Shown in pieces: positions 1 to 64,000 of a stretch of DNA of 64,000 nucleotides (positions are counted from its first letter, which is position 1; each line of letters begins with the position of its first letter). The position numbers and the translations under genes were made by a program. The DNA lies in assembly GCF_001194135.2 (NCBI RefSeq), contig NC_068988.1, positions 12,864,274 to 12,928,273 on the forward strand, given 5' to 3'. The notes under the pieces are model-generated. The model was not told the origin of the DNA and searched no databases. It saw only the letters and a list, made by a program, of their open reading frames with translations. This DNA comes from Octopus bimaculoides. Its lineage: Eukaryota.

Positions 1-385
1 ACCTTGGTGGACCCCTACCTTTACCCGGAATTCATTGCTGTACTCATTTCCAACCCTCACCTTACTGGCAGCATCTTTGTACATGGCTCACACAGCTCTC
101 ACTAACCATTCTTCTATCCCAAGTTTCCTCATTGACCACCAGATAAGGGATCGGGGGACCCTGTCAAAGGCTTTCTCCATGCCAACGAAAGTCAGGTACA
201 GAGGTTTATCCTTGGCTAGGTATTTCTCCTGCAGCTGTCTTACTAGAAATAAGGCATCAGTAGTGCTTTTACCTGGCACGAACCCAAACTGCATCTCATC
301 TAAATTGATTCGCTCCCTAATTAGTTGGGCTATGACCCTCTCTGTAACTTTCATAACCTGATCTAACAGCTTGATGCCTCTGCTA
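1..385 (-). mobile_element. RTE-clade LINE reverse transcriptase fragment (young)
   Basis: ORF 88-354: KVTERVIAQLIRER...QFGFVPGKSTTDALFLVRQLQEK...KAFDRVPR, canonical RTE RT motifs. Confidence 0.95.
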
Positions 386-4598: not shown

Positions 4599-4845
4599 TT
4601 TTTTTTTAAAGTCCGGTACTTATTCTATTGGTCTCCTTGGCCAGACTACTAAGTCACGGGGACATAAACAAGCCAACACTGGTTGTCAGAAAATGAATAA
4701 ACATACTGGGCTTTCATACAATTTTTGTCTATGAAATTCACTCACAAGATATTGGTTAACTTGGGAGTTATAGTTGAAGATACTTGCCCAAGGCCTCACA
4801 CAGAGTGACATGGTTGCAAAGCAAGTGTCTTAACCACACAGCCAT
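4599..4845 (-). mobile_element. tRNA-derived SINE, CORE-like ccttgggcaagt family (partial inverted duplicate of 6304-6544)
   Basis: ggctgtgtggttaag..ccttgggcaagt head plus accagtgttggcttgttt body. Confidence 0.9.
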
Positions 4846-6297: not shown

Positions 6298-6632
6298 ACA
6301 AGTATGGCTGTGTGGTTAAGACACTTGCTTTGCAACCATGTCACTCTGTGTGAGGCCTTGGGCAAGTATCTTCAACTATAACCCCAAGTTGACCAATATC
6401 TTGTGAGTGAATTTCATAGACAAAAATTGTATGAATGCCCAGCATGTTTATTCACTTTCTGACAACCAGTGTTGGCTTGTTTACATCTCCATGACTTAGC
6501 AGTCTGGCAAAGGAGACCAATAGTATCAGACTTTAAAAAAAAATTAAATAAGTACTGGGGTCAATTTACTTGACTAAACCCTTCAAGGTAGAACCCTAGC
6601 ATTGTTGCTCTCCAATGACTGAAACAAGATAA
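6298..6632 (+). mobile_element. tRNA-derived SINE, same family, with tail
   Basis: Same head and body; ends in aagtactggggtcaat..gactaaacccttcaag..gactgaaacaag. Confidence 0.9.
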
Positions 6633-6794: not shown

Positions 6795-6946
6795 CTCTGC
6801 TTTATGGTCTTTTTCTTTCTGTTCTTTAATATCCTTATCATTTTTATGATTTTTATCATGATTTTGGTGATTACTGCTATTTTTATTGTTACTGGTATAT
6901 GAATAATGGTTGAGTCTCCTATCTGATGTAGGTGAGTCAGTGGAGC
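6795..6946 (-). CDS. WAC: WAC coding exon (STDSPTSDRR...DHKAE, 152 nt)
   Basis: Acceptor ttctctcttatcag, donor GAG|gtaaat; phase 1 in matches the previous exon; open only in a hydrophilic N/H/K-rich frame. Confidence 0.88.
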
Positions 6947-9900
6947 CTGATAAGAGAGAAAATACATAAAGATTACATTACATTGTGTAAAATAAATAGA
7001 ATTTAAGATATAACTGCAAAGAAAAATTAGACATATGAGGTTATATTTATATTCAATGACAATACATATTTCTTGAAAAATAAATGGAAAAAAGTAAAAA
7101 AGAGTGGGAGAGATTTAAAACACAGTACAATAATGAAAAATTAGTGAAGGAGTAGAAAGGTGAGAAAGAGATGGAAACAATTTTTTATTATTATTATTCA
7201 GTTTAAATACCTGAAAATCAAATGTTAATTAAGGAGGTGAAATTACTAAATGCTTAAAAGAAAATGGGATTTTAGAATTTAGAAATGAAAAATGAAAACT
7301 GAAAATTAAAAAAATCAAATCTTTCCATTAATTGAAACCAACATTTCCCAAGATCTCATGTTTACATTAACAAGATATCGTATACATTTCAAACTTGAAG
7401 ATAAACATAAAACATAACTGAATTTAAATAGCTCTTCAATTCATTTTAGCCACTGTGCCTAAGGCCATGCTGGACTTTCTAAAATAAAATAGAATAATTA
7501 ATTCTTATTCAAATGAAAAAAAAGTTCACCCAATTATGAAATAAAATACAATTTAACCTTTTTTATATACACCAACGCTTTTAAGTTTTCATCGTTAAAC
7601 TAATCATCATAATTTTATGTAAGAATTTTTTGTTATGCTTCAACCAACAGCTTATCTTACTTAATTCTGCCAAATTCTAATTAGTTTTGTAAATTAACTG
7701 CAACACAGAGTATTTTATTAGAAATATGATATATATAATCAGAAAATTCTCAAAGAGAATAGTAACATTTTGTTTGTGTGTGTATTCAATTCTGGCTATT
7801 TATTTAAATTCACATCAAATAAGAAAATCAGATTTCAATAAACTTATTGAGTTCAAATTTATATATTTCTCATTTTAATGAGTGATATATAAAATTTAAA
7901 ATGTGTTTGTAGCCATCTTTACATAAATATTTTAAAATCTAGTCAAAATATTGGTTAAGTTTTTGAATAATTTACTTTTCACCCACAGCTGTGCTAAAGA
8001 CATTAACACAAACAGCATAATTATCACCAAAACATTAATTACAATTCAAAACACGACAAACAATAACATAGATGGCTGATATCAGATGACGAAGGGCCAC
8101 AACCAGGGGCAAGATGATACAATACTCATCTAATCCATACAAAGAAAAATTATTATAAAATGACACTAATTATGAAGATGACTCGGATTTTACCACCTAG
8201 CATTAATGTTGATGAAATCAATTCTCTAGGCACATTTAAAAATTTATGAATTACAATAACATTCACTTGAAAAGTGATATTTAAATTATCAACCAATTTC
8301 ATTTCAAATAATTACAAAAACAAAAATCATTTAATTTTAGAATTTTATGGATATTAACCTACATTAATCTACACAGTATTTCATCTGGTTTTGATCTCCA
8401 ATATTGTACCAGACTTGATTTGAACTAGGGTCTTGTATTTCTAATCTAAAGACATTACTTTGATTTTTTTAAAATTAGTTCAGGAAAAAAAGTTCTAAAT
8501 TCAAACTCAGTCAAGGACCATGCACAGAAGTAATCCACTAATGAGAATGAAAACACTTTACATATAAACTATAAAAAGTGATTAATTGTACAATCTCAAC
8601 TCATTGAAGCATTTAAGATTACCGTAAAGTAGAAAATAAACTTCATATTTAATATCCTGTTATAGATGTTAATCAAACTTATCAGAAATACTTGTATGTC
8701 AGTAAATATTTGAAGTATGATAGAAAAACATTTTTATTTATGAGACAAGCAAACGAAATGGCAACAAAATAACAAACCTATTAAAAACATGTTCAATCTA
8801 AACAAAAAAACTACAGACTGAAAATATTTGAAGACAGTGGAATAAAATCTATTTTTCCTTTCTTCATTGAGTAAAGAAAGATATTCTAAGTNNNNNNNNN
8901 NCCCCCCCCCCCGCCTCATCAAAACCACTTTAATAACTATTTGTTATCAATTTCAAAATATCAAATAACCTTTTAAAAAATCTGAACAAGAATTTTGGCC
9001 AGTGAATTAAATAAGAAACTGTCTCAATAAGATCTAACAAAGAACTGAATTTATTCCAAACTATCAGTAATTCATTACACGAATAAGGTGGACGTCAAAC
9101 AATGATGATAATGATAAGGGGCTAAATTAAAAGGTCTCTATTGATAACCTTACAGAATTAATGCAATGAAATATATAACTAAAAAAAATTAGTAAACAAT
9201 AAATATAACATGCTGAAACAAACTGTGCCCATTAAGAATGCACTTCTAATATGAAAACTATGATTTAATTTATAAATTTACAATTACTTGGAATTTGTTA
9301 ATGTAAAAAGCATTTAGGTGTAAAGATACTCATGCGTTTTCATTTAGGTAAGGGGTAATGTAGTAAGGAGGTGGTGGGAAATTATTTCCAAGAGTTGAAT
9401 AAAGATCAACAATGCTCAGCTATGTACAAATCTAAACAAAAATTTTCATGTTTGCAACCTCATTACAGCTAACCAAATCTATTCTTAAGAACTAGAAGAG
9501 TCAAGTTCTTCAAGTTCTTCCACAGAGTTTTTTTTTTTTTTTTTAATACTTATTTGAAAATTTCAGAAGAGTTCCTTCATTATTTTTTTTAATGAATAGT
9601 TTTGAACATGTTCCTTCACAAGTTATTTTGAAATAAAAACATTTTCAGAATTAACTGACATTTCATATTTTATTGAGGCTCTATCAGTATCTGTGGCAGT
9701 ACTACAGTTTCAAGAGTGATTGAAGGAAAGAGAAGAATAAACCAGAATCCATAAGCTATCTTGAAAATGGAAATCTTGGTCTGAATGTTTGCAACAGAGT
9801 GGATTGTTAAAGGCACACAAGGGCAAGGTGGCAGTATTAAACTGAAAAATAGATTAAATCTAAACCGAAGCCGAGGTCTGTGTCTTTAGATTATTCATTC

Positions 9901-15900: not shown

Positions 15901-18900
15901 CCCATACTTTCAATTTGGATAGTTTAACATACACATTTTATCACAATTCTGAAACACTTATCCAATATAGAAATTGATACACATATACCAATAAATAAAA
16001 CCATTTTCCCTCCCTCTCTACAGTTGCCTACTATCGAAAATATTATAGCATGAAGTTAGAGTTCAATTTAGTATACAACTTTGATAATTCCAGTTAATGA
16101 ACTTAATGACTAATGTGTATTTTGCAGAATAAATAATTGATCGAATATAACAAATATGTACATGTAAAGTTAGGAAGATCATCCAGCTATAAGAACTGCC
16201 AAAGGAGACACTGAAGCATGAAAACAGTCCTTGGACCCATCAGATCTTGTCAAACCATCCAACTCATGCCAGCATGGAACATGGACATTAAATGACAATT
16301 CCATTTCATTGTTTGTTTGCTTTTAACTAAGCAGGAGTTTTTTTTTAATGTTTTAAGTCTTGTAAACTGGTATCCTTAGGACAATTTTTTTTAAAATGGA
16401 TTAGCTTTTTTTCAAATGGTAATATGCACTAAAAAAAAACAAAACATATATTTGTAGATTCTACTTAATCTGTTAGCATTATTAAACCTGAAGTCACATG
16501 CATGTTTTAAGAAAATAATTTCGTTAGATTTTAATGTTTCTAAACTACAACACATTATCAACCTTTTCTACTTCACTAAGTAAATAAAGCTGTTTATATA
16601 CAACAAAAAAGGAAAGAAGAAAAAAGGATTTATATTTAACCTTTATAAGCTGTTTAACAAATTTTCTAGAATAAACTTTATCAAATTGTATAAAATTGAT
16701 ACAAGTTTGGAAATAAAAAGATTAAAACAAAAAATTAAAATAAAATGTAGAGATGATATCTATCTATCAATTTGTGTTAACATTAACACAAAGTATGTAT
16801 TACTCTATGAAAAGAAACTATATGGGACAGCATCAGTGTTTAAAGCAAGCTAAGATAAGACTCAAATGACTGGTTCATTAATATGTTAATATCAAATTAA
16901 AGGGAGTTTTGGGTTCAGTCAAAACAAAGTGTTTTAGTCAGAAATTCTTGGTACCAATTACTTTTGTAAACTGCATTTAATTTAAATTCCTTTATTCAAT
17001 CTCCACCACATTCAGCCTTTACAAAGATATGTTTTTAAAACTTTATCAATAAATTTCACCAACATATGTTATTTAGAATATGTAAATATATTTTCATACT
17101 CTAAACTAAATTCTTACAATAAACTTTGAAAAATTATTTGCTATTTTAATGTATTTACGATAGCAAGAAAATGAGAGTTGCACTATTCCTGTATTTTCTC
17201 CATCTGTACAATTTTGTTTCTTAACTTTGTGAACTGCAATTCATTAGGAAACATCAAACTGTCATATCTGACATTATATAACCACAACAATAAGAAATGT
17301 CTTTTTTAAAAAGCTTAGGCAGGAAGATAATACATACTCATGAATTTTTCAGGGCTGAGGTGACTGATGAGAAGTTAAGCTAGACTAAATATCCGACCCA
17401 TATGCTTGCAAAGGAGTGGACTCTGCTAAAAGCATCCAAAGATTACTTGGTCGTGTTAAAACAATCAATAGATTGAGTCTCTCACCCCAAAAAATAAGAA
17501 CAGTCTTTCTGACACTCTTCCAGTTTCCAGCTGCCAAATTTCACTCAAATTTTGACCCAAGGCTATAGAAGTCATTTGCCCAAAGTGCTGTATACTGGAA
17601 TCAATCATAGAATCACATAATTGCAAGGTAAAATTCTTAATCTCACAGCCATGCCTAAAGTTTAAACTTTAGTCTCTGCCCAATCTTTGATAAGATAATA
17701 CAAGCAATTTATTAACTGGGGACCACAAAAATAATTATACATATTGAAGTGAATGAAATCTACAAATACAACCAAGTTTACAAAATAAGCTATCTAAAAA
17801 GAATTCAAAATTACAAACTGTAAAAGATTATAATTTTTAAAAAATTCTTAATGTAGAAATTGATACCAGCAGAAAATAGCAGACAGACAATTTACTACAT
17901 AACAAAAAGCTTAGAGATAATTATCACAATCTTTAACCAAACTATTACCAAATATCTGACCCAAATGCCTGCTAAAGTGCAGACACTGCTAAAGGAATCC
18001 ATTGAAGCCAAACTTTTTTTTTTTTTTTTACACAGTCTAACAATCAAAATGTATGCAACACAAACTCTGCAGAATGAATTTTATTCAATTCAGACATAGG
18101 GAAAATATTATTTTGAAGATTATTTTATGTAATCACTCTAACAGTACTTTTCAACAGAAAATCATGAAATTACTATTGTCAAATATATTGAAGTTTGTGC
18201 TTTCCATAAATACTGGTGAAACCTATCTTGGGACATTATAACTTTATCATAATTTCAAATTTTATAAATAAATCTAACAATCAGCAGTGGATTTGTTAAT
18301 GAGCTGTCTTGTTATTAAAGATGAAATTTATGTACTTTCTGAACAAGCTCTATGATTACAAATGCACCTAACACCTCAACTTCAATGAAATCAAGCCAAT
18401 GCTGGAGCCTCTATGCAATCTTTCAACCTGCTAGCCATAGCAGTCAAGCCTAATTCTAGACCTAGTCTTTTGGCTGACTAATTACACACTATTGATTTAC
18501 ACCCTCAAAACTAACCTGGAGCTACACAGCAAATTCAATAAAATTCAATATTTCAAGAAATCACTTTATCTATAAGTTTCTTGAATTAGAAATTAAGTCA
18601 AAATTTAGCAAAATAAGAAACAAAAATAAGTTTCTTGGGCATATTTCAAAATAAATTCCAGTCACTTATACACATATATTTGACAGCTTTTGAACTACCA
18701 TGCTAGTCTTGATAAATCATTAACTCATAAAAAGAACAGCCAATAAGTCTTAAACAGAAACAACTGATTGAGGCAAAATGACATTTTAAACTAATAAAAC
18801 CTGCTGTATTTATAACTGTTCCTTACATAGGCAGAAGGTCAGAAATGCTTTGTGAGAAAAAATATTAACATTAAGTTTAGTACCAATGTGTTATGGGTTC

Positions 18901-21900
18901 ATTTGAGATGGGAAAGTGAAGTTCATTAGTAAAACAGCTTTAAATTTCTGAAAAATATTAGAAATGTATGGATTTTTAAACATAATTTTACAGGATTTCC
19001 CTCACTCAAATTTGTCATCATCCTCAATCTCTAAAATGTCCATCTCAAATTCATCATCATCATCAACCTCAATTTTCATTACATTATCTGTTTTAATTTT
19101 ATCATCAGCTTAAATGTCATCACTTTAGGTAGGAGGGAGGTTTTTTTTGGTTTTTTTATATGTACCGACATTGTCACATAATTACAAAAAAAAATATAAA
19201 CATTAAGAATGTTTTGTGAAGGATTAGAAGGTTTGCATTATAAAAATTGCCACAGCTTACATTACTGTAAATATACATATATTCAATACAAATGTGCTGA
19301 TGCTACATAAAAAGCATCCAGTCCACATTGTAAAATGGTTGGCATTTGGGAGGGCATCCAGCTATAAAAACTTGGCCAAAACTGACCTCACCTGTGTTTG
19401 TGACACATAAAAAGCAGTTAGTCCGCTCTGCTGGGTGGTTGATGTTATGAAGGGCAACCAGCCGTAAAAACCCTGCCAAAACAGACACAGAAGTTTGGTG
19501 CAGGCTCCTGCTTGGCCAGCTCCTGTCAAACTGTCCAACCCATGCCAGCATGGAAAGGCGGACGTTAAATGATATGTAATATACATACTATATACATATA
19601 TACAACACAAAATATCAAATGAATTAACCTTACATTCATTCTTCCCATTTCTGAACTATTAAATCAACCACAACTTTGGTCTCAGCTTGTAGTCGATATA
19701 TTTATGTATATAAATTACACTGAATGGCACAGGGCTGACCTTGATTACCAAAGATGATTGTGCTGGATTTATGAGAGTTAAATGGGAATAACGCATAAAC
19801 AGTTATTTATTTTTCTCTGATGTATTGTGTATATGTATATACTACATAGTTTTATATACATCTAATGTACTAACTGTATTGTATATTTTTGATAATATAA
19901 GGTGTGGTAATTTTTATTACACAAACCTTGTAATCCATCACAAAACTTTTTCATGTTTACATTACAATTATGTGATAAGAAATCACTGATATCAATGTTT
20001 GTACATGAAAATAAATGGTCCATCCTTCAGAGAAAACATTTAAGATGATGACAACAACATTAAAGTTGATGATGACAATGTAATCAAGACTAATAATGAA
20101 ATGATGCTAATGATGACATGTTGACGGTAACAAGACTATGGTCAATAAAAGAAAATTTGCAGGGAAAACCCTGTAATAGTGAATTTCAATGTCATAAAAT
20201 TGCATCACAATGAGAGAATACATATAAAATGTATGAACAAAATTCTTATGAAAAAAAATCTTGGTGGAATAAAATTAACCAAATATTAAATAAAATTCAA
20301 ATCAATACTAATTAAGTAACCTAAGAATAATAATGTAACAGATTTGATAGCAAGTAAATTATAAAATGATTAAAATGTGTGTGTGCATATATATATATAT
20401 ATAATATACATGCACACAGAATATAGGCAACAATATTCATGATATAAAAATTCATTTTTTAAATAATTTTTCATAGAGAATATAGGATATAATAATCTGC
20501 AATGATAATTGTACATTCAAAGTAATTTATATTAAAAATTTGACAAGACATTACTATTTGGAAAAAAAAAAAAGACTTTGTAATTTATATGTGAAAAATA
20601 AACTAAGAAAATCATATGAAAATTTTGTTTTAAGAAAAGAACTATTCAAATGAAAGAAATGATAGTCTCAGCCAGAAACAATTCATAAAAATCTACAGGA
20701 CAATTTGATCTCCACTTCCAATTCCACCAATTTTATATTCAGTAATAGACATAGATGCAAATTATGTCTGAAAATGGTGGGTACACAACAATGCAAAGAT
20801 TTGAAAAACAAAATTTGTTATAACGATGAGAAAGAATAAACCCAAAGAAATGTAAAAATTAAATTATACATTAATATTTGCAATTTTAAAATGATTCCTG
20901 TTCAAAAAGTAATTAATATGTATAAACACAAGTGAATTAATAGAAGAGAACTCACTTCCTTAACACAATCCCAATTCTTATTCCAATTATATGGACAATG
21001 TCATTTACTATTGTAACTAATTTAAATGGAGATAAAATATCTTACGAGTTCTTAAATTTATGCATGGATCTCAAATTTATAAACTCATTTCTTGAATTCG
21101 AATGTTGAATTTTATTCCAGCAATAACTATAGAAAAATATAAACCTCAACAACAAAAACTTGTCAAGAATTAAAATCATTTTCTATACCATATGAAAAAT
21201 GACAACTCATTATAGAAGTAACTTATTTCAAAATACTAATTCTATGATTTTGTCTCAAAGATTTAGTTTTCAAACTATGAATTACTGAGCCAAACCTTTA
21301 TGCCATGATTATGCAAAGCCAAAAAACTGTATAAGCAGTTAGCTTAATCACAAATTTAATGTTAATTAATAATGTAGCCAGCCTTTAATATATTCAAAGG
21401 CAATATCACCTTTAACTTACTAATATCATTATTTGCCAAATTCAGTTAATATATGCAACTTTAGTCTAGATCAAACATAAGTTTGGTTAAAATCGCCTTC
21501 TTTATCCATGATAAATAAGCTTTAAAAATTCACCAAAACAGATTGGTTAGTCTGAATAACAAATATTAAAAAAATTATAGTATCAACTAGCATAACATGA
21601 ACAATTATTCAGCAATTTGTGATAGAACATTATGGTACAGGATTTGCTGTGTGCTTTATACGTTGAGTTTGTAAATATAATAGCTTTTAGGTTCAATCCC
21701 ACAGTACAGCACCCACAATAGTATCTTTGAATGGAATTTGGTAGTCATGGTCCATCATGTGTGTATATGTGTGTGTGTTCTGGTGGTGGTGTTTATGTCA
21801 TGTCCCTAAACTGAAATAAATACTGGAATCAATATGACTGACTAAACCCTTGAAGGCAGTGCCCCAGCATGGCCACAGTTCGATGACTAAAACCAGTTAA

Positions 21901-24900
21901 AGAATAAAAGAAGAGTTAGATAATTATGTTGATTTAACATGTGAAGCAACCAGAAGTAAATCAAAACAGCTGCTGTATATTTTCAACAGGAGATATACAA
22001 TGAAATAAGATTTAAGAAAATCTTAACAGTCACAAGAATCTAAAAAAAAAAATTCTTTTTAATTAAAAAAAAAAGTAGAAACAAAATTTAACAAAAATAA
22101 TATAAACAGCAGCTTTGCAATACTAAAATTTCTCACTTGTTTTTGGTAATCAGTGGCTATTGTACTCCAGGGGGGGCCAGTCATTAGAATAAAGAGATCA
22201 CACTTACCTGCCTGTACTAATTTCTACATAATAATAATCCATGTATTAATCCAATGTATATAAAGTGAATACAATAAACAATCCTATAGGTGACCAATTC
22301 TGACCTGCCACACACAAGTAATAGTAATATGAAATAGCGCACCTCTTTCCAGTTTTTCCTTAGTTCTTTCAATATAAGTGGTCTTGTTCTGATATCGGGG
22401 ACTATGACGACTTCTGGGGCTGTCATCTCTTGTCCTGTCGTCATCGGGGGAGCTTCGCAGCTTTTCACAGCGACTGGTGATTGTATATGGGTACTGCATG
22501 CCCTAAAATTTAAAAAGAAAAAAATAGCAAAAATCCAGAAATGGGATTATATTAAAGGAAAGAAGATATATAATCATATATTTAATTCTACATGTCATGT
22601 ACTTAATTACCAAAACTGAAATAAGACTGATCAATTTTACAACAGAATCTAATTATTCAGTTTTTTTTAAAAATATTGTATATGAGAAGGTAAGTAGAAA
22701 ATTTTGTTCCTTTCTAATTAAAAAAAAAAAAAACTGAACCTGTCAAATATACTACAAATACTGATGGTTTCCACATCACCCCAGTGGCAATCTCATATTC
22801 TTAACATAATAAAATAAATTATGATAAAAGTTAGAAAATATTTCAACTGATCTATTGATTCTCCACAAAGTTCAAAGTGCACAATGGAAGCTTTCTCCAA
22901 CATTTGCAGCAGTATACATGCACATAACAAACTGAATAAAAATTTTTTTTAATAAAATAAAGCCAACAGACTGATTTGCAAAGATTCATTCACCAACACA
23001 TTACAAACACCCCCAGGTCAACAAGCAGACTCCTTGGACCCCCTGGCTACATAACACTGAAGCTAAGTATCTTGTCCCATATGTTTAGATCAACTGAAGT
23101 CTACCAAGTGAAATATGGTGGACAGAAAGTGCATGAAAATCAATTAGGTGGATATGTGTTTGTTCTAAATGACAATCAGGGCTTCACAAAAATACCTTCA
23201 AATATTTATCATATTTGGGTTACACTCAGGCTGACTTTGCTGGTTCCAGCTTACAAGGTTGATAAATTTGTAACATGCACAATCAACTAAAACTCTGAAC
23301 ACAAGTAATCCAATGAAACCAGTAAATAAAAGATCTATTTTCCAAAAGATTTATTCTGCCAAGACTAGGATTTAAATTTCAGATATACTCACAAATGAAG
23401 TCGAACATTTATTAGAAAATTTTAATTTTTCCCACACTAAAAAGTAAATATTTTTAAGCTTTGGTATATTTTTTCTTTTCTCTTTCTTTTTATCTCTATG
23501 CTTAATACAGTTTTTTTTTTTTTGTTTTAAATTTTTTTAATTATTTAACTATTAGTACTCCACAAATTTCATGCCCTTTTTTCTTACAGCCACACATTTT
23601 GCACCTGCCAATATCAAAGACTGAATTTAGTATGGATCTTTTTTGAATTCAAATTCTTCACAATTTCTTTGACATTGTCCTTCAAACAATATTGATTAGT
23701 TATAAATAGATCACCCACTGTACCAAAATAAAGCTTAATAGGTATCTGTACATGATAAACAAATCTTTAAAAACTGCTGTGATGGTTGTATATGAAAAAT
23801 TGTAAATTTAGATTTCTTACAGAAATTTTTTTTTATTTTAAAAATACGAACATAGATTATAAAAAAGTGGCATTTTAATTATTTATTAATGATTTATTGA
23901 AATAGCTGAAGTAAAAAGATGAAAATAATCAAATTAAATTAATGTACATTAAATAAAATTTGTGTCAAAACAAAAAATAATTTGAATAGTAAAGAATTGC
24001 CATTTAGATGTGATTTGAGATTGAATACAAATAACATTGTATGTTGTGGCTTATACAGAGTGTTATTTTAATAAACTAAGCTCCATAAACTTTAAGAGTC
24101 ACAAATAAAAAATAATTCATTATGGCAATTTAAAATTTTGCTGTATTTGAGTCTAATAACAGTATATATAACTCTTTAAACTGCCAATACAAAACATTTT
24201 TATACACTGTATCCACCAAGTACTGTAAAAACTGACTATGAAAATCTTTCTTGTTATGTAGATTTTTTTGGAAGTCGCTTTTAGCAATAAGTATACAAAT
24301 TTTGTACAAAATAAGAAGTATAACAAGTAAGAAATTATAAAATATTAGATTTCAATAATTATTTACACTAAGGGAAAAAATTACAACTTTCCAGTGCTAT
24401 CAGACAAGTAGCACAATTTGTCTTGTTAACTATTTATTCCTGCCTTAAAGTGGTTCTTTGAAATCATAAATTCTTGTAATTTTTTTCTTTGACATTTTCT
24501 CTATCATTTTTTAAAAATATGACCTATGTATTTCCATTACTAAATAAAGATACCATGGGTTGTTCAGACAAGTCTAACTTTTCAGTTGCTTTTGAATTAG
24601 TTATAATCTATATAAAATACTCCCAGAGTAAGTTTTCTTTCTATATTTCCTATAACTTCCTCTATGTTTCAAAACTACATTTCCTTAATATAAAATTCTC
24701 CTTCATATTATTTTCATTACATTTGTTATTCAAAAGTATTTTTAGCAAAGCTGATCCATGATAGAACTATCTTGCATAAGATACAATTTGAGTGTAAAGT
24801 TGTTTCTATTGACATAATTTAACTTTTTAGTCAAAAACAAACAAATTTACTTTGCATTTATTAATGTCTGACAGGATTCACACTTTGCAGTCTGAGGATT

Positions 24901-27900
24901 ATAAAAGAAAAAAAAAAAGAAAAAAAACAGATGTAGACAAATGGCTTGTGAAAGCTGTATTAAATGCTACTGTTAACAAGTTCAGGATTAGCAATAAGCC
25001 TAATGAGAACTTGGTGTACAAGTAAATGTTGACCATACTATCATAAACCCCCTTATATTCATTATAGACACTGAAGCTATTAGAGTTCCAGCCTAACTGT
25101 CCTTGCAAGCATTTATCAAGTTCTCAGAGGAATCCGTCTCAAAGAATTGCAGAAAAAGTTCTAAAATTAGAAGCATGGCATCGAGCTTAAAAGTCAACAT
25201 GATGAATGCTTAAATATTAAACACTAACATTAAATAGTGTACATAAAATCCGGCTGTCAAATGGGAAGTCGATTGATATGTAGAAAGGAAGTTGGTAGGA
25301 ACTTGATATTGCATATTTAGTGCAGGCAATGGGTACAAAAGGGGTGCCACGGGATTTCTGGCACATTAACAAAGATCCAAGACTTTACATGTGATACAAA
25401 CAGTAGTAAGAATAAGAAGCATCCAACAGTTGAATTTCATAAATTGCTGACAGATAGACAACTAAGATATAGTTGAAAACTTGTTGCCACAATAATCTAG
25501 TGGTAGTTGCAGCAAAATTTGGAGCTTTAGTGCATCTGTTGGCAAAAAATGGTTTCTCTCCTCATGTAGACTGTAAAAAGTATGCACAAGTGTGATACAG
25601 CAGAGTAAGATATGGTTACTACAATGAAACACATGCACTGAAAGAAATGATCTGTTGGATGTGAACAGTTAACCAGCATAGAAAACGGAACGAAAGTGTA
25701 AAAGAGAGAGGGGAAAATATGTGCTATCAATGGAAAGAACCAATGGAAAAGGCAAGATGTAAGAATACGGTCAGACCTCACAGAAATTATGAAAACCCAA
25801 AATGCTTGTTAATTATGCCTTACATCAAACCCATACAACTATGAAGGGGGGAAATGTTAAAACAATTACTACACAAATTATATGCAAGAAATATTCCTTC
25901 TTTGAACATTAAATGAAAAAAATCCTTCCACATTATTATTTTACTGTGTCGTGAGGATCAAAGACTTGAAGTATTTCGTGTTGCAAGACAGTGTGTGAGA
26001 GAGAATCGTGATGTCGTAGGAGAGAAATGTGTTCGCATGGATGATGGTATGCTTGCACTAAACGAGGCTGCAAAGAAAGAGGTTTGGAGACACCACTACG
26101 GAAGATTGCTCAATAAAGAGAATGAATGGGAGAAAGAGAGTCTGCCGAATGTCGACCCAACAGAGGAACCAGCTATCCGAGTTGACAGTACCATAGTAGA
26201 TAAAACAATTAAGAGTATTAAGACAGGGAAAGTCCCCGGCCCATCAGGAATCACTGCAGAGATGCTCAAAATATCTGTCAGTGTCGGCTATAGCCTAGTC
26301 ACCCGTATTGCTAACTAGGTGATACACGAAGGAGTCATACCCAATGACTGGTATAGCAGCACCTTAGTCAACTGCTACAAAGGTAAAGGTGACGCTTTAG
26401 ATACAAATAATTACAGAGGTATCAAGCTGTTAGATCAGGTAATGAAAGTCACAGAGAGGGTCATAGCTCAACTAATTAGGGAGCGAGTCAGTTTAGATGA
26501 GATGCAGTTTGGATTCATGCCAGGGAAAAGCACCACTGATGCTATATTTCTGGTAAGACTGCTGCAGGAGAAATACCTAGCCAAGGATAAACCTCTGTAC
26601 CTGGCTTTCGTTGACATGGAGAAGACCTTTGACAGAGTCCCCCCGATCCCTTATCTGGTGGTCAATGAGGAAACTCGGGATAGAAGAATGGTTAGTGAGA
26701 GCTATGCGAGCCATGTACAGAAACGCTGTCAGTAAGGTGAGGGTTGGCAACTAGTACAGTGAAGAATTCCGAGTAGAGGTAGGGGTCCACCAAGGTTCTG
26801 TCCTCAGCCCCCTCCTACTTATCATAGTCCTCCAGGCGATAACAGGAATTCAAGACAGGATGCCCCTCGGAGCTCCTCTATGCTGATGACCTTGCACTAA
26901 TTGTTGAGTCACTATCAGAACTAGAGAAGTTTCAGGTGTGGAAGAAGGGACTAGAATCAAAGGGCCTTAGAGTCAACCTAGCTAAAATCAAAGTACAAAA
27001 TGCCTAACTGTGATTCAGTGATAAGTTACTTGAGCAACAACAAATCAGTACATGAAAATAAACAGGAATAAAATGTATGTAATACTTTGGGAATTTAACG
27101 TGATTAAATATAGGTTTGTACAGCAATTTTTACCCCTGACATAAGGAAAATCAAAACACTACACTGAGAAACAAAAAATATGGAATAATATTTTACTGTA
27201 CACTTAGTAAAAATACATGAACATAAAAAACAACCATTAAAATTAAAAGAATAAAGAATAAAAACAATACAAATATTACCTGTACATTATAAGGAACGCT
27301 TTTAACCTTCAAATTCTGAAAATTGTCTCTTGTTATCAATATCCTTAAATAAAAATATCTTTAAAAAAAAAAAACAACCAAAATTCACTGATGTTATCTA
27401 TATCACTAATACTATCAAGGTTATCAATGTTGCCCACCATCCAAAGCCACAATTTTAAAGAAATTTTGCAACTATTTTGGTTTTTACAGCATTCCATGAT
27501 TTTAGGACCTACTCACAGACCTGAGTGATTAACTGTTGGCCTTTTTGGGCCATCTGTTGGTATCAGTCACGATTTATGGTGCTCATCTAGTGATTCCACT
27601 CTTCTTAAATGTCTTAAAAAGCTAGATAATGGCCACATCAGTCATAACTGATTTGTTACTGTACCATGGACCTTTGCCATTTTCATCTCGACTCTGTGCA
27701 CCCTTTCTTTGATACTCATGCTTTATTAAAAACAAAACTGAGGCAGCATGAGTAAGGATACTTTTTAAGGAGGACACTAGAAAACGCAGGTCAGATTTTA
27801 TCCAGAGCTTAATCCCCTTTTTATCCATTCGCTCCTTTAGATGGATGTAAACAAATTCCACATGGAATTTTGTCCTTTGGTAAAGTTATTCTCTTAAATA

Positions 27901-30900
27901 TCAGCAGTGGTAGCAATTTTGTTCCATCAGCACATCATGACAGCACCACAGTATATAATGGGGTTTCTCCAAATCCAGATGTCTTAGCAGTTAGTTTTGG
28001 TCCCTTCAAGATCCATGTCCAATTTGAAATAAAATCAAACATTAATGGCACATCAGCCATGATTCGATCTTACCCAGTTCATAGTCTTCTTTCTTGCACT
28101 GTGAAATTAAATTACTACTTTGTTCTTACAACACTATGGTATTTGTTGTACTATTCTCAAAAATAACCATGTCTTTTCATAAAACTGTAGCATCAACTTG
28201 GCATGTCATGAAAATCATTCAGACCTCATGCTACTGTTTTCAGTTTAGATTAATAGTTTTTGTTGATGTTGAATTTTCTCCCAACACTATCCAATCCATT
28301 TTTGCCTCCAATTCTTGCAGTTTAGCTACAGGCTTATGCAAGTTATGTATACTTCTTCATACTGGCTTCAACAGATTCTTTTACTTCCTCCAGTAGCATA
28401 TCATTTTCTCAGTTGGAGGTGGTCCAAAATACCTCTTCAGCTCAGTCGCCATGCTGTTTGGCATATTTAAATTTTTTGCAGCTTATAGCCAATGGTGTAT
28501 GAGTGCCTTTTAATTCCAGATGCTATAATATAAGTGTTAGAAATTTCAAGTCAAAAGTTTTTTGAAGCTGTAGAACAAACCTAACTAGAACATATTTGAA
28601 TTTAAACTGATCAAAGGCAATACTTTTTAGACATTGAAGAGAAAGCCCATATTGATAAATTTTTTAAAGTATTATCTACATGTTATTAATCTTAGTATTA
28701 TCTACATGTTATTAATCTTAGTGCAGCATGCACAGCTAACAACTGAACATTTTTAGATTGAGAAACATTTTCAAGTAGTTTTTAACATACATTAATCTAC
28801 AACTGCAGTTGTCTGCTAAATTCAAGATTCTCATAGCTTGAGTGAGCCTGCCCTGAGACTGGCTGTTATGTTATGACAAGTCAGCAACACCACATGTACA
28901 ATGAAATAGTGCAATAGTATCGTTACATATACAGAGATACAAGAAATAAATCTTAAACTTTTCCAGAAAGATGCAAAGCATTTTTAAACAACTAAAAACA
29001 GCAACACTGTATAACAGTATTCCACAAGTGCACTCCATGTATCCTTTCAAGTTGAAACTTTTTCAAATACAAATCACAAGTTTTTGTTTTATGATCTAAG
29101 CTGTTTCTTTAATATGAAGTTCTATATTTAAAACTTCTTCAAACCATTTGCCAAGCACTGCTGACTGAATACATTTCATCACAGAATAACAAAATACTAA
29201 CAGATGAGTGTCTGGTTATTATGGTTTTAATAAGATTTACTAAATAACACAGTACAATTTTACATTTTTTTTTTTTTGTCACCTGATATTACCCCACTTA
29301 AAGTCAGGGTTCATAGATGTAAACAAAATTGATTAATTTTTAGTATAATTTACACACTTCATTCAGAGGTCATATACAAGAGTTCAAATTACTAACACAA
29401 ATCTTCCTCTAGGGTTAAAATAGATTATGAAAAATATAACCATCTTCTAGAAATTCACGGTATATCTTGAAGACTTATTTCAGGGGTAAAGAATAGCATC
29501 CTCACTGCCAGAAAATATGGTACATAAAACTAGGAAGGTAACAAAAACCTAATCTGCCAAATGTAAAAGAAAGGTCTTTGGTTCAATGGCATCATCAGAA
29601 ATGTATAAATGATACATGGTTAGTTCTGGGTTTTAATCTAATTAGAATTAATTTAGCCTTTTTAATACACCAGAATCATTAAATATCAGTAACACATTCT
29701 TTTTTTAACTACTACTATGCATTTAGTTAATTGGGCTTATGTGATTGCTTCATTTCATTTGAATTGCATAGTCAAGTGGTGTTCTTAGCCCTCAAGGAGT
29801 TTAGCTGAGGTTCTCCTCCATCTTACTTCTTGTACACAGTATACATCTACTTGCCCTCTTCTAGCATCTCTAGAATCTACAATCTCAAGAAAGAAGCAAC
29901 TGTAGAAATATCAAACTGATAGATCAAGTTATAAAAGTAACAAGTGTTTTAGAATAAATGTTCTGGCATCTCTAGAAATGATAATGAGATGCAGGTTGGA
30001 GCACTACTGATATAGATGAGAAGTTCTTAAGAATAAGCTATTCTTCTTAGCATATACAGAGTTCAAGAAGACCTTTGACATAATAGCATACTCTATAATC
30101 TGGTGGACATTAAGACAACTTGATATAAATGAAAAGTGTGCAAGTCATATACAAAAATGCTTTCAACATCAAGAGAGTTGCCAATGAGTTGAGAATTTAG
30201 TGGGAGGTTAGATGTCCACCAAGGATTAGTTCTCACTAGGCTCATGTTTACTAAAGTTCTCCAGGCCATAAAAGAGGAGTTGATGATCCAGTACTTATAA
30301 CTGAATCTGTGAAATATTCAGATGAAATCCAAGATATGGAAACAAAACCTCCAATTGAGAGAAGTCGAGTAAACTTTGCAAGGATTAAAATCTTAGTAAA
30401 TAAGAATAAAGACAGGCACTCCAATCATTAGAGAAATGGTTGTAATCAATATGGAGAAAAAGAACAGATAGAAACTGCATACATATTACTAAGGGTGTAC
30501 ATTCAGGTCTGCCAGGCTGCCAGAGAAAAGAGTCTCTGCATGTGACATGTATAAGAGTTACTAGCAGTTAGAGTACCAACAAAATAAATACTTTCCACGC
30601 CTCAAAATGGCTCCAGAGAAGTAACTGAGTTTCTGTGACCTAAACAGCCATGGAGAAATGTGCTGACAGACAGTAGTAGCCAAAATAAGAAGAGGGTGCG
30701 AGGTAAATTCAGAGAGCTATTAGCAAAGGGATTGTTTCTTCAAGCAAAGAACATTAAATAATACCTGTATATAAAGTGCAATGTTGCAATTTTGTGACAC
30801 CAGTCGTGAGTGTAGATGAGCAAAGGCTGGAAAGAAAGGAAGTATGCTCTACTGGCTATGTAATGAGAGTGGATATGGTAGATAGAAACTGTGCGGAAAC

Positions 30901-62134: not shown

Positions 62135-64000
62135 GAGAAGGGAAGAACGCACCGAAATTCTTCCAAAGAAATTTTTTTTTAAATAAATTTTACCAGCATG
62201 ATTGTAATCCACACTCTGGAAAACGTATCGCTGCAAAATCTTAAAGAATAATGTATTTTACAGACAGTTATAAGGAAACAAAATCGGTGAAGTGAGGGCA
62301 CCACCAGTCTGCAGATCTATCTGTCTCTCTGTCTTTATATAAACACACACATACATATATATACACAGATAAGTACGTATATACACATACGTGTGTATAT
62401 ACGTATTTTACATATATGTATATTCATATATCTATGTACATATATATGTATGCAAATACACACACACACACATATATATATGTGTGTGTTTGTGTATTCA
62501 CTTGTGGTTTTTAGTCGAAACAAAACAGCACTCAACTATATGAATATCATCTTTTACTTCATTCATTGGATTGTGGCCATGCTGGGGCACCACCGAAAAG
62601 GATTTAGGCAAATAAATCAACCCTAGTATTTATATTTCCTTAAAGTTTGGTACTTTTTCTGTCAGTCACTTTCGCCAAATCGCTACGTTACAGAGATGTA
62701 AACAAACCAACACCAGTTATCAAGCGGTGGGAAGGAAAAATACAAGCAAAATATACACGCCCACACACACTTACGCATGATCGGCTTCTTTTAGTTTCTG
62801 TTAACCAATTTCGTTCACAAGGCTTTGGTTGGTCTAAGGTTATAGAAGACACTTGCCCAAAGTAACAGACAGTGGTACTAAACCCAAAACTACGTTTTCA
62901 CTACCATCTTTATCTCTCCAGCCCCCCACCCCCACCCCCGATTACTCCTACCCACTCTTGTAAATGTGACTAGCCATGCAGCCACCCTACAGCCCCTGCT
63001 TTTATCTCTAACCTATTATCACCTGCCATAAAATTACCTCCCACTTTATTGTAGCTCCACTTGTTCAAAGTCGAAAGGGATCTTAATCTTGCAAGCTACA
63101 GGTTGACATGTTGGTGCCACAATAAAAGCACCCAGTACACTTTGTAAAGAAGTGGATGTTAGGAAGGGTATCCAGCTGTAGATAGCAGGTCAAAGCAGAC
63201 TTTGGAGTATGATGCAGGCCTTCAGTCCATCAGATCCTGTTAAACTGTCCAATCCATGCCAGTGGCATGTAAAAAGCATCAAGTACACTGTTAAGTGGTT
63301 AGCGCTAGGAAGGGCATCCAGCTGTAGAAACCATGCTAGCTCCATGTCAAACTATCTAACCCCTGCTAGCATGGAAAACAAATGTTAAAAGATGAAGATA
63401 ATAAATATATCATCATATATATGCTTATATACGTTATATAAGTTTTATTTATATATCATCATCATTTAACGTCTGTTTTTCATGCTGGCAGGGGTTAGAC
63501 AGTGTACTGGAACTGGATGCTTTTTACTTGCCACTGTCATGTATATATATATTCATATATCATGTCAAGCTAAGTAAAATCTTGGTCCCTGCATCCCTCT
63601 TCAGCTGACCAATCCTAATCTTTTGGGCTCATGGATGCTGGTGCCATGTCAAAAGCAACCATGCTGGTGTTGCATAAAGGCATCCAGTACATTCTGTGAA
63701 GTGGCTGGTGTTAGGAAGGACATCCAGCTGTAGAAATCATGCCAAACAGACATGGAATCCAGACATCTCTTCAACTGGCCAGTTCTTGCCAAACCATCCA
63801 ATGCATGCCAGCATGGAAAACGGAGGTAAAATGGTGATAATATACATGTATATATATATATATATATCATCATCAACATTTGATAGCTGTTTTCTATGCT
63901 GGCATGTATATACATACATACCTTTATTTGTGAATTAAGGTTACCATTGGTTTCATGTCAAGAAAAACAGAAAACTATCTGAATATCGTAACAATTTTTC

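What the first reader, a model, noticed from the sequence alone, without database searches (positions are those of the whole stretch)
22208..22342. Weak/strong 5' splice-site pair: a poison extension of the WAC exon
The in-frame donor at 22343 is weak (AG|GTGCGC), while 135 nt downstream lies a perfect consensus donor CAG|GTAAGTG (22210-22201). Using it keeps the frame length but adds two in-frame TAG codons; the first (22284-22286) is 76 nt from the new junction, beyond the 50-55 nt NMD rule. A third donor, CAG|GTCAGA near 22304, would shift the frame. This layout is typical of AS-NMD autoregulation. WAC is dosage-sensitive (human haploinsufficiency causes DeSanto-Shinawi syndrome) and links RNF20/40 H2B ubiquitination to Pol II elongation, so elongation-coupled feedback is plausible. 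Both stops are UAG, which A-to-I editing could in principle recode to Trp; that part is speculative.
Basis: partly seen in the sequence, partly recalled or inferred. Interest (0 to 1): 0.7.

Follow-up and report, generated by a model that had tools for sequence, protein, structure and literature searches.

The report
Conserved alternative splice donor, octopus WAC
Right after one coding exon of the octopus WAC gene lies a 135-base non-coding stretch ending in a perfect splice signal; it stays conserved across distant octopus relatives while the rest of the intron does not, so it most likely lets the cell make a self-destructing version of the message to tune WAC levels, though nobody has yet seen that version.

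Summary
The window is Octopus bimaculoides WAC on the minus strand. Exon 3 (22502-22343) ends at a weak donor, GAG|GTGCGC (U1 duplex -5.4 kcal/mol). A perfect CAG|GTAAGT lies 135 nt downstream (-14.0 kcal/mol), the best U1 match of 3878 GT sites on the gene strand. Using it would add stop codons in every frame.

The 135 nt plus about 25 nt beyond the distal donor are 94.8% identical in Argonauta hians and 81.4% identical in a more divergent unidentified cephalopod contig. The surrounding intron falls to about 35% (noise). Both donors are invariant. Frame-breaking indels and shifting stops rule out coding constraint.

Four non-cephalopod molluscs have stronger proximal donors, no distal donor and no similar sequence.

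All 12 annotated isoforms and one assembled transcript use the weak proximal donor. Use of the distal donor is therefore unshown.

The best reading (about 0.5) is a conserved alternative-5'-splice-site module giving an unproductive, NMD-prone isoform, built like RPL10A/rpl-1. The third donor, the frame-keeping length and the UAG-editing idea are not supported. Autoregulation remains inference.

Novelty: new member of a known kind.

The parts
54288..54328 (-). WAC exon 1, coding part (MVMHARKLPRLNDG; ends in phase 2, donor TGG|GTACAA)
   Evidence: the exon 1-2 junction is seen in transcript contig L009
54055..54088 (-). WAC exon 2, 34 nt ((G)YGDKKETHLYQ), donor CAG|GTAAAT. It resolves the apparent phase conflict between exon 1 and exon 3.
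   Evidence: tblastn 100% match; present in P0003/P0018 and in L009
22343..22502 (-). WAC exon 3, 160 nt (GMQYPYTITSRC...TKEKLER + first base of Gly)
   Evidence: Nucleotide identity is 97.5% to Argonauta and 93.1% to the ENA cephalopod contig.
22337..22345 (-). Proximal (productive) 5' splice site GAG|GTGCGC: weak, and invariant in three cephalopod genomes
   Evidence: U1 duplex -5.4 kcal/mol, rank 248 of 3878; PWM 2.5 bits; invariant GAAAGAG|GTGCGCTATTT; junction used in all annotated isoforms and in L009
22208..22342 (-). 135-nt conserved non-coding interval, the putative poison extension of exon 3
   Evidence: 94.8% (Argonauta) and 81.4% (ENA contig) identity against about 35% beyond it; indels -1/+5 and stops in all frames; single copy; no Rfam family
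22299..22307 (-). Third donor-like site CAG|GTCAGA (+38 nt, frameshift), specific to Octopus
   Evidence: present; GT lost in Argonauta (CAGGCCTGA) and in the ENA contig (CTGATCAGA)
22284..22286 (-). First in-frame TAG of the extension (codon 20 after the junction), 76 nt before the distal junction
   Evidence: It is kept in Argonauta, but an earlier TGA arises there. It is not kept in the ENA contig, where a TGA comes after 12 codons.
22224..22226 (-). Second in-frame TAG
   Evidence: TAA in Argonauta
22233..22257 (-). Invariant 25-nt core ACATTGGATTAATACATGGATTATT (two copies of CAT(T)GGATTA), a candidate regulator binding site
   Evidence: identical in all three genomes; no exact match in the JGI metagenome or GTDB collections
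22202..22210 (-). Distal 5' splice site CAG|GTAAGT: perfect consensus, invariant in three cephalopod genomes
   Evidence: U1 duplex -14.0 kcal/mol, rank 1 of 3878 GT sites; PWM 8.8 bits; CAGGTAAGTGT invariant
22183..22207 (-). Conserved 25-nt tail after the distal donor. Conservation ends here.
   Evidence: 84% identity in both comparisons, then 32-44%
6795..6946 (-). WAC exon 4 (STDSPTSDRRLNHYS...DHKAE), the acceptor for either donor
   Evidence: Conservation extends only 8 nt (Argonauta) or 2 nt (ENA contig) past its donor.

Best explanation
Exon 3 of octopus WAC carries a conserved two-donor module.

The productive mRNA uses a weak donor, GAG|GTGCGC. A perfect U1 site, CAG|GTAAGT, lies 135 nt downstream. 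When it is used instead, exon 3 gains 135 non-coding nucleotides with a stop codon after 12-19 codons. That leaves ten or more exon junctions and about 1.3 kb of former coding sequence downstream of the stop. Such a message should be removed by nonsense-mediated decay, or at most yield a protein of about 95 aa lacking the WW and coiled-coil domains.

The conserved interval between the donors, including an invariant 25-nt core and a U/A-rich stretch just after the weak donor, would hold the binding sites that set the ratio of the two donors, and so the WAC dosage.

Shown:
- the two donors and their strengths;
- the premature stops;
- strong non-coding conservation bounded exactly by the exon and the distal donor;
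- use of the proximal donor.

Inferred:
- that the distal donor is used at all;
- that the product is degraded by NMD;
- that the ratio is regulated, whether by WAC itself or by other factors.
For: 1. Donor strengths. The distal site is the best U1 match of 3878 GT sites on the gene strand.

2. Conservation of the interval.
   - Exon 3: 97.5% (Argonauta) and 93.1% (ENA contig).
   - Extension: 94.8% and 81.4%.
   - First 25 nt after the distal GT: 84% in both.
   - Beyond that: 32-44%.
   - In 28.7 kb of the distant cephalopod contig, only exons 3 and 4 and this interval align with the window at orthologous positions.

3. Within-gene baseline, Octopus versus Argonauta.
   - Conserved flanks downstream of the other exons are 6-30 nt, with two exceptions.
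   - The known alternative cassette exon 8 has 177 nt at 78%.
   - The promoter-proximal exon 2 has 230 nt at 82%.
   - Exon 3 has 174 nt in a block that is 93.6% identical.

4. No coding constraint: indels of -1 and +5, an extension of 139 nt in one species, different first stops, and stops in all three frames in both species examined frame by frame.

5. Not a repeat, not a known RNA family, not a stable structure.

6. The orthologous donor in four non-cephalopod molluscs is stronger (3.5-7.8 bits). None has a strong GT within 500 nt, and none has sequence similar to the interval. The weak/strong pair and the conserved block therefore go together.

7. Precedents.
   - Conserved sequence between two alternative 5' splice sites drives autoregulated AS-NMD in rpl-1/RPL10A, and alternatively spliced introns of nematode ribosomal-protein genes are exceptionally conserved (PMC4937301).
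   - WAC localises to nuclear speckles and regulates alternative splicing (PMC11904943).
Against: - No transcript or protein model with the distal junction was found. All 12 annotated isoforms (O. bimaculoides, O. sinensis, O. vulgaris, Argonauta) and one Logan RNA-seq contig use the proximal donor.
- Exact look-ups of the predicted read-through ORFs found nothing. This is uninformative rather than negative: NMD targets are rare, and raw reads could not be searched.
- The stops themselves are expected by chance in AT-rich sequence.
- NMD rules have not been established in molluscs (my knowledge).
- WAC is not known to bind RNA directly.
- Only three genomes carry the block, and one of them is unidentified.
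- The donor PWM was recalled from human data.
Confidence: 0.5

Rival explanations
1. Splicing enhancer or U1 anchor that is never itself spliced. The weak proximal donor cannot recruit U1 efficiently on its own. The perfect U1 site 135 nt downstream, together with proteins bound to the conserved U/A-rich interval (TIA1-type or others), defines exon 3 and hands splicing to the proximal GT. The block is conserved because constitutive exon 3 inclusion depends on it, not because an unproductive isoform is made.
For: Every annotated isoform and the assembled transcript use only the proximal donor. The proximal donor is the weakest among six orthologous donors, so it plausibly needs help. The conserved block ends about 25 nt after the U1 site. 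That U-rich sequences downstream of weak donors act through TIA1 is established knowledge, not tested here.
Against: A perfect consensus donor that lies closer to the acceptor would normally be used at least sometimes. Keeping a 9/9 U1 match unused would need active repression. This model does not need the whole 135 nt conserved at 81-95%. It cannot be separated from AS-NMD with sequence alone.
Confidence: 0.2
2. Two-step (recursive or nested) splicing. The weak donor is first joined to the AG at 22209-22208, removing the 135 nt as a mini-intron. This regenerates GAG|GTAAGT, a strong donor that then removes the remaining 15.2 kb.
For: The distal site has the AG|GTAAGT juxtaposition typical of recursive sites. 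The intron is long, 15.4 kb. A branch-point-like UUAAU and an AU-rich tract lie 30-55 nt upstream, inside the invariant core.
Against: - Three competing AGs lie between the putative branch point and the AG|GT in Octopus, and they vary between species.
- The 20 nt just upstream of the AG|GT are purine-rich and the least conserved part of the distal half.
- Known recursive sites sit deep in long introns, not 135 nt from the exon (my knowledge).
- The first step would still depend on the weak donor.
Confidence: 0.07
3. The block serves something other than donor choice. It could be a DNA-level conserved non-coding element (enhancer) that happens to abut the exon, or an editing-complementary or other structured RNA.
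For: Other non-coding blocks near exons 1-2 are also conserved between Octopus and Argonauta. Coleoid cephalopods conserve sequence around RNA editing sites (my knowledge).
Against: - The block starts exactly at the exon and ends about 25 nt after a sense-strand perfect donor. Both donors are invariant.
- There is no stable or covarying structure: z-scores are +0.2 to +2.4 and 0 of 47 predicted pairs show compensatory change.
- Accessibility of the distal donor is no different from shuffled controls.
- There is no Rfam hit.
- Identity (94.8%) is well above that of the other non-coding blocks (78-86%).
Confidence: 0.08
4. Chance. A cryptic consensus donor in an intron with no function.
For: Donor-like motifs are common in long introns. 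The exact 9-mer is expected 0.4 times per window on both strands.
Against: Syntenic conservation in two other genomes whose introns are otherwise unalignable with the window.
Confidence: 0.02

Closest known systems
rpl-1 / RPL10A autoregulated AS-NMD through the L10ARE element (Takei et al. 2016, PMC4937301)
   Same: One exon has two alternative 5' splice sites. A conserved non-coding stretch lies between them. Use of one site gives an unproductive, PTC-containing mRNA. The conserved alternative intron region stands out against unconserved constitutive introns.
   Different: In rpl-1 both junctions are confirmed, NMD sensitivity is shown, and the protein binds the 39-nt element directly; conservation reaches from nematodes to vertebrates. 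Here only the productive junction is seen and no binder is known. WAC is not a known RNA-binding protein. The whole 135 nt plus a 25-nt tail is conserved, so far in three cephalopod genomes only, and it is absent from four other molluscs.
Ultraconserved poison cassette exons of SR-protein and related splicing-regulator genes (e.g. SRSF3, TRA2B; abstract of PMC13228269)
   Same: A non-coding, stop-containing exonic segment is conserved as well as or nearly as well as coding sequence, in a gene tied to nuclear speckles and splicing.
   Different: Those are separate cassette exons with their own acceptor. Here no conserved internal acceptor exists (TGTAG becomes TGTAA in Argonauta), so the segment would be a 5'-splice-site extension. 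The depth of conservation is far smaller.
Recursive (ratchet) splice sites AG|GTAAGT in long introns (Drosophila Ubx and others; vertebrate RS-exons). From my knowledge.
   Same: An AG sits directly in front of a consensus GTAAGT, in a 15-kb intron.
   Different: It sits 135 nt from the exon rather than deep in the intron. It has a weak, purine-rich upstream context with competing AGs. The entire interval is conserved, not just the site.
U-rich intronic enhancers downstream of weak 5' splice sites (TIA1/TIAR-dependent U1 recruitment). From my knowledge.
   Same: A weak donor is followed at once by conserved U/A-rich sequence (GTGCGCTATTTCATATTACTATTACTT).
   Different: Such elements are short, within about 30 nt. 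They do not explain a 160-nt block ending in a perfect donor.

Membership tests
[quoted passage not shown] | The exons encode a protein with the conserved N-terminus, a single WW domain and a C-terminal coiled coil, named WAC by curated sources. | tested here: met
   Window exons 1-4 match P0003/P0018 at 98-100%. NCBI and UniProt name them WAC for O. bimaculoides, O. sinensis, O. vulgaris and Argonauta. Pfam WW E 2e-10. Window bases 17000-28000, the stretch compared, are 100% identical to the O. bimaculoides WAC locus.
AS-NMD (unproductive splicing) by alternative 5' splice site | Two competing donor sites follow the same exon. | tested here: met
   The motifs are present and invariant in three genomes. 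Strengths are -5.4 versus -14.0 kcal/mol with U1. This shows the sites, not their use.
AS-NMD (unproductive splicing) by alternative 5' splice site | The alternative isoform carries a premature stop far upstream of the remaining exon junctions. | tested here: met
   The in-frame stop comes after 19 codons (Octopus), 14 (Argonauta) and 12 (ENA contig). All three frames are closed in Octopus and in the ENA contig. Nine further coding exons lie downstream.
AS-NMD (unproductive splicing) by alternative 5' splice site | The alternative region is conserved at nucleotide level without coding constraint. | tested here: met
   94.8% and 81.4% identity against an intron background of about 35%. Frame-breaking indels are present.
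AS-NMD (unproductive splicing) by alternative 5' splice site | The alternative junction is actually made. | tested here: inconclusive
   It is not present in 12 annotated isoforms or in one assembled transcript. Exact ORF look-ups were negative. Raw RNA-seq reads could not be searched with these tools.
AS-NMD (unproductive splicing) by alternative 5' splice site | The isoform is stabilised when NMD or translation is blocked. | not testable with these tools
   This needs an experiment (cycloheximide or emetine, or UPF1 depletion).
Autoregulatory AS-NMD | The gene's own product shifts the donor choice. | not testable with these tools
   There is only indirect plausibility: human WAC sits in nuclear speckles and affects alternative splicing through RBM12 (PMC11904943).
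Recursive splice site | AG|GTAAGT preceded by a strong polypyrimidine tract and branch point, deep in a long intron. | tested here: not met
   The juxtaposition is present. The 20 nt upstream are purine-rich with competing AGs that vary between species, and the site is only 135 nt from the exon.
A-to-I editing substrate (exon paired with an intronic complementary sequence) | A long, stable duplex involving the region. | tested here: not met
   Folding energy is no better than shuffles (z +2.44, +1.53, +0.90, +0.38, +0.15). There are no compensatory pairs.

The most novel reading that the evidence does not exclude
Octopods evolved, in the lineage leading to Octopus and Argonauta and to at least one deeper cephalopod branch, a dedicated dosage sensor for WAC. 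It is a 135-nt RNA element between a deliberately weakened productive donor and a perfect decoy donor. WAC-dependent speckle or elongation state is read out there as donor choice and fed back through NMD. This would be a lineage-specific analogue of the RPL10A L10ARE switch, in a chromatin and splicing adaptor whose haploinsufficiency is pathogenic in humans.
Probability: 0.15. Interest if true: 0.65.

Novelty: new member of a known kind. Interest (0 to 1): 0.5.

Why it matters
If the distal donor is used, this would be a clear sequence-defined candidate for regulated unproductive splicing in a cephalopod. That group's post-transcriptional regulation has been studied almost only through RNA editing.

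It would also show that WAC dosage is buffered at the splicing level. WAC is a dosage-sensitive adaptor between H2B ubiquitination, transcription and nuclear speckles.

The element is small, sharply bounded, and has an invariant 25-nt core. A junction RT-PCR with and without NMD block, plus a minigene, would settle it. The conserved core gives a direct handle for finding the regulator.

If the distal donor is never used, the block is still a well-defined case of a conserved U1 anchor supporting a weak donor.

Tried and rejected
1. An apparent phase conflict. Exon 1 ends in phase 2 and exon 3 starts in phase 0. This suggested a missing exon or an internal start codon. A 'QPYQA' candidate at 47330 was a chance match. 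The real 34-nt exon 2 lies at 54088-54055.

2. The +1 frame of exon 3 is also open and slightly better conserved at amino-acid level. Dual coding was rejected. The annotated proteins and the transcript use frame 0. A hydrophilic frame 0 rarely has T at codon position 2, which keeps the +1 frame open (my reasoning).

3. The word-indexed homologue search returned only P0001 and missed the annotated WAC proteins. A six-frame concatenated query gave nothing. The orthologous exon was reached by walking the ENA contig with a neighbouring ORF. The annotated proteins came from the representative search.

4. Protein-pattern scans of the JGI metagenome and GTDB collections and a scan for the invariant 24-mer found nothing.

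5. An exon:intron duplex, an editing-complementary sequence and a donor-masking helix were considered.
   - RNAalifold drew a helix between the extension and the distal donor.
   - It has no covariation, z-scores are at or above 0, and accessibility of the distal donor is within the shuffled range (22% of shuffles at or below the observed value).

6. A micro-exon cassette (TGTAG|AAATTAGTACAGGCAG|GT) was considered. Its acceptor is lost in Argonauta.

7. Repeat or transposon origin was excluded: the block is single copy in every locus.

8. Rfam gave no hit.

9. Exact look-ups of the predicted read-through ORFs were not in the collection.

10. The O. sinensis locus could not be fetched because the gene range is 108 kb. 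No close-relative intron baseline was obtained.

11. The run and assembly accessions of the unidentified contigs were not found in the paper library.

12. Literature searches for a WAC poison exon, unproductive splicing, or ultraconserved/NMD links found no report.
Full report
**What is there**

The gene lies on the minus strand. Window bases 17000-28000, the stretch compared, are 100% identical to the Octopus bimaculoides chromosome record CM046608.1. NCBI and UniProt call the encoded protein WW domain-containing adapter protein with coiled-coil, and it has a Pfam WW domain.

Four WAC exons fall in the window:
- exon 1, with coding sequence 54328-54288;
- exon 2, a 34-nt exon at 54088-54055;
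- exon 3, at 22502-22343;
- exon 4, at 6946-6795.

At first I saw a phase conflict between exon 1 and exon 3. It disappeared once exon 2 was found.

The annotated proteins read ...TKEKLER|GSTDSP.... An assembled RNA-seq contig (Logan SRR3401912, L009) carries GGAAAGAG|GCTCCACTG. The weak donor at 22343, joined to 6946, is therefore the productive junction.

**The observation**

Every coordinate in the finding is correct.
- The proximal donor is GAG|GTGCGC.
- CAG|GTAAGTG follows 135 nt downstream, so an exon would end at 22208.
- In-frame TAGs lie at 22286-22284 and 22226-22224. The first ends 76 nt before the would-be junction.
- CAG|GTCAGA at 22305 would add 38 nt and shift the frame.

The difference in strength is large.
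- Duplex energy with the U1 5' end is -5.4 kcal/mol for the proximal donor and -14.0 for the distal one.
- The distal site is the best of all 3878 GT dinucleotides on the gene strand of the window. The proximal site ranks 248th.
- A consensus matrix, whose frequencies I recalled from human data, gives 2.5 versus 8.8 bits.
- The exact 9-mer occurs once on this strand, and twice on both strands against 0.40 expected.

Two points in the finding carry little weight.
- Stops are expected by chance here. The local composition gives about 0.07 stops per codon, so about three per frame in 45 codons. All three frames are closed.
- The 50-55 nt distance to the new junction hardly matters, because nine more coding exons follow.

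No cephalopod genome collection was directly searchable, so I reached orthologues indirectly.

First, the exon 4 peptide hit an ORF called on a 261-kb contig of an ENA metagenome assembly (ERZ21867824, ctg120803l). Only exon 4 and about 25 nt of flank aligned with the window, and the introns did not. I then walked 8.4 kb up that contig through a neighbouring ORF. This reached the orthologue of exon 3.

There the alignment runs from the exon start, through the proximal donor and the whole 135-nt interval, to about 25 nt past the distal donor. Then it stops dead.

Second, the representative search returned the annotated WAC proteins. The Argonauta hians protein gave its whole 65-kb locus. The only syntenic matches to the window are the exons with short flanks, the promoter and exon 1-2 region, and a 373-nt block at 93.6% covering exon 3 plus the interval.

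Identity to Octopus in the three-way alignment:

| Segment | Argonauta | ENA contig |
|---|---|---|
| Exon 3 | 97.5% | 93.1% |
| 135-nt interval | 94.8% | 81.4% |
| 25 nt after the distal GT | 84% | 84% |
| Next 25 nt | 44% | 32% |
| 30 nt upstream of the exon | 83% | 45% |

- GAAAGAG|GTGCGCTATTT and CAG|GTAAGTGT are invariant.
- A 25-nt core, ACATTGGATTAATACATGGATTATT (22257-22233), is also invariant.
- The ENA organism is further from Octopus than Argonauta is (exon 3 protein identity 88.7%; Argonauta has 2 amino-acid differences from Octopus in exon 3). It remains unidentified.

**Conservation is not coding**

- The distant species has a 1-nt deletion and a 5-nt insertion, so its interval is 139 nt.
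- The first in-frame stop is TAG after 19 codons in Octopus, TGA after 14 in Argonauta, and TGA after 12 in the distant species.
- The second TAG is TAA in Argonauta.
- The third donor is lost in both other species (CAGGCCTGA, CTGATCAGA).

The frame-keeping length, the particular TAGs and the third donor are therefore Octopus details, not conserved features.

**Within-gene baseline**

I located all 13 coding exons in the O. bimaculoides locus and chained its matches to Argonauta. The conserved stretch downstream of each exon is:
- 6-30 nt for exons 4-7 and 9-12;
- 230 nt at 82% for exon 2, which is promoter-proximal;
- 177 nt at 78% for exon 8;
- 174 nt for exon 3, in a block that is 93.6% identical.

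Exon 8 is the 36-nt cassette ELNRETSITKVK, which is present or absent among annotated isoforms. In this gene, then, a long conserved downstream flank marks the one known alternative exon. The exon 3 flank is the best conserved non-coding sequence of the gene.

**Outgroups**

Four ORF calls on genomic contigs of unidentified non-cephalopod molluscs read through the orthologous donor (P0008, P0010-12; loci L003-L006). They are 41-64% identical to bivalve, gastropod and octopod WAC in this exon.
- Their donors are GTACGT, GTAAGT, GTAGGC and GTAAAC, scoring 3.5-7.8 bits. All are stronger than the cephalopod GTGCGC.
- None has a strong GT within 500 nt downstream.
- None has any similarity to the interval.

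The weakened proximal donor, the perfect distal donor and the conserved interval thus appear together, and so far only in the three cephalopod genomes.

**What it is not**

- It is single copy in every locus.
- It matches no Rfam family.
- It is not a stable structure. Exon plus interval folds worse than or equal to shuffles (z +2.44, +1.53, +0.90, +0.38, +0.15).
- RNAalifold finds no compensatory pair among 47 predicted pairs.
- The predicted accessibility of the distal donor lies within the shuffled-interval range.
- This removes the basis for an editing duplex and for a donor-masking helix.
- A micro-exon cassette reading fails, because its acceptor is lost in Argonauta.

**How it most likely works**

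The best-supported reading, at about 0.5, is a conserved alternative-5'-splice-site module.
- Default splicing uses the weak donor and gives WAC mRNA.
- Use of the perfect distal donor keeps 135 nt with an early stop.
- That yields a message that should be degraded by NMD, or a product of about 95 aa without the WW and coiled-coil domains.
- The conserved interval would carry the sites that set the ratio.

The architecture matches rpl-1/RPL10A. There, a conserved element between two alternative 5' splice sites binds the protein and switches to the unproductive site. Alternative introns of nematode ribosomal-protein genes are likewise exceptionally conserved (PMC4937301).

Human WAC sits in nuclear speckles and regulates alternative splicing through RBM12 (PMC11904943). 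Feedback is therefore conceivable but untested.

The donors, the stops, the conservation and use of the proximal donor are shown. Use of the distal donor, NMD and regulation are inferred.

**Rivals**

- U1 anchor or intronic enhancer that supports the weak donor and is never itself spliced (0.2). Sequence alone cannot separate it from AS-NMD.
- Two-step splicing through the AG|GT (0.07). It is weakened by the poor and variable acceptor context.
- A DNA-level element or another RNA function (0.08). It is weakened by the exact fit of the block's boundaries to the exon and the donor.
- Chance (0.02).

No transcript with the distal junction was found. Raw reads could not be searched, and NMD targets are rarely assembled or annotated.

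**Novelty and verdict**

I found no report of a WAC poison exon or of unproductive WAC splicing.
- The kind of mechanism is well known, so this is a new member of a known kind.
The conservation prediction held strongly, and the usage, NMD and autoregulation steps remain open.
- The third donor, the frame-keeping and the editing ideas are not supported.
- Interest is 0.5.

Noticed in passing
window 4619-4845 and 6304-6529: An inverted pair of a roughly 230-nt repeat lies in WAC intron 4. The arms are 92-99% complementary and about 1.5 kb apart. It could form a long intramolecular dsRNA in the pre-mRNA, the kind of substrate ADARs hyper-edit.
   Followed up: partly
window ~95-330, minus strand: Fragment of a retrotransposon reverse transcriptase (Pfam RVT_1, E 3e-6, just below the gathering score). 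It has an in-frame stop and sits in intron 4.
   Followed up: partly
window 19400-19573, 39910-40068, 46360-46499, 63294-63841: A dispersed repeat of about 150 nt (SINE-like). Many copies also occur in the Argonauta hians WAC locus at 70-93% identity.
   Followed up: no
window 54055-54088 (minus): WAC exon 2 is only 34 nt and lies 200 nt after exon 1. Its downstream intron is conserved for about 230 nt (82%) between Octopus and Argonauta.
   Followed up: partly
L008 82114-82149 (O. bimaculoides, outside the window): The 36-nt cassette exon ELNRETSITKVK is included or skipped among annotated isoforms. It has 57 nt upstream and 177 nt downstream of conserved intron (78%) versus Argonauta. It is a second candidate regulated splicing event in WAC.
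   Followed up: partly
window 22343-22502 and 6795-6946 (minus): The +1 frame of exons 3 and 4 is also free of stops. In exon 3 it differs at fewer residues between species than the true frame does (4 versus 7 of 53). This is most simply a by-product of hydrophilic codon composition and nucleotide-level constraint, not dual coding.
   Followed up: partly
window 8892-8901, 53072-53081, 55600-55609: Three runs of exactly 10 N (assembly gaps).
   Followed up: no
L001/L002 (ENA ERZ21867824 ctg120803l); L003 (ENA ERZ25069853); L004 (JGI 3300040954): Long animal (cephalopod or mollusc) contigs sit inside assemblies deposited as metagenomes. Their introns have been given prokaryote-style ORF calls. 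This was useful here, but it is a source of spurious 'proteins' in metagenomic protein collections.
   Followed up: no
window 54341-54349 (+): The only other CAGGTAAGT in the window lies on the opposite strand, 13 nt upstream of the WAC start codon, within the WAC 5' UTR or promoter region.
   Followed up: no
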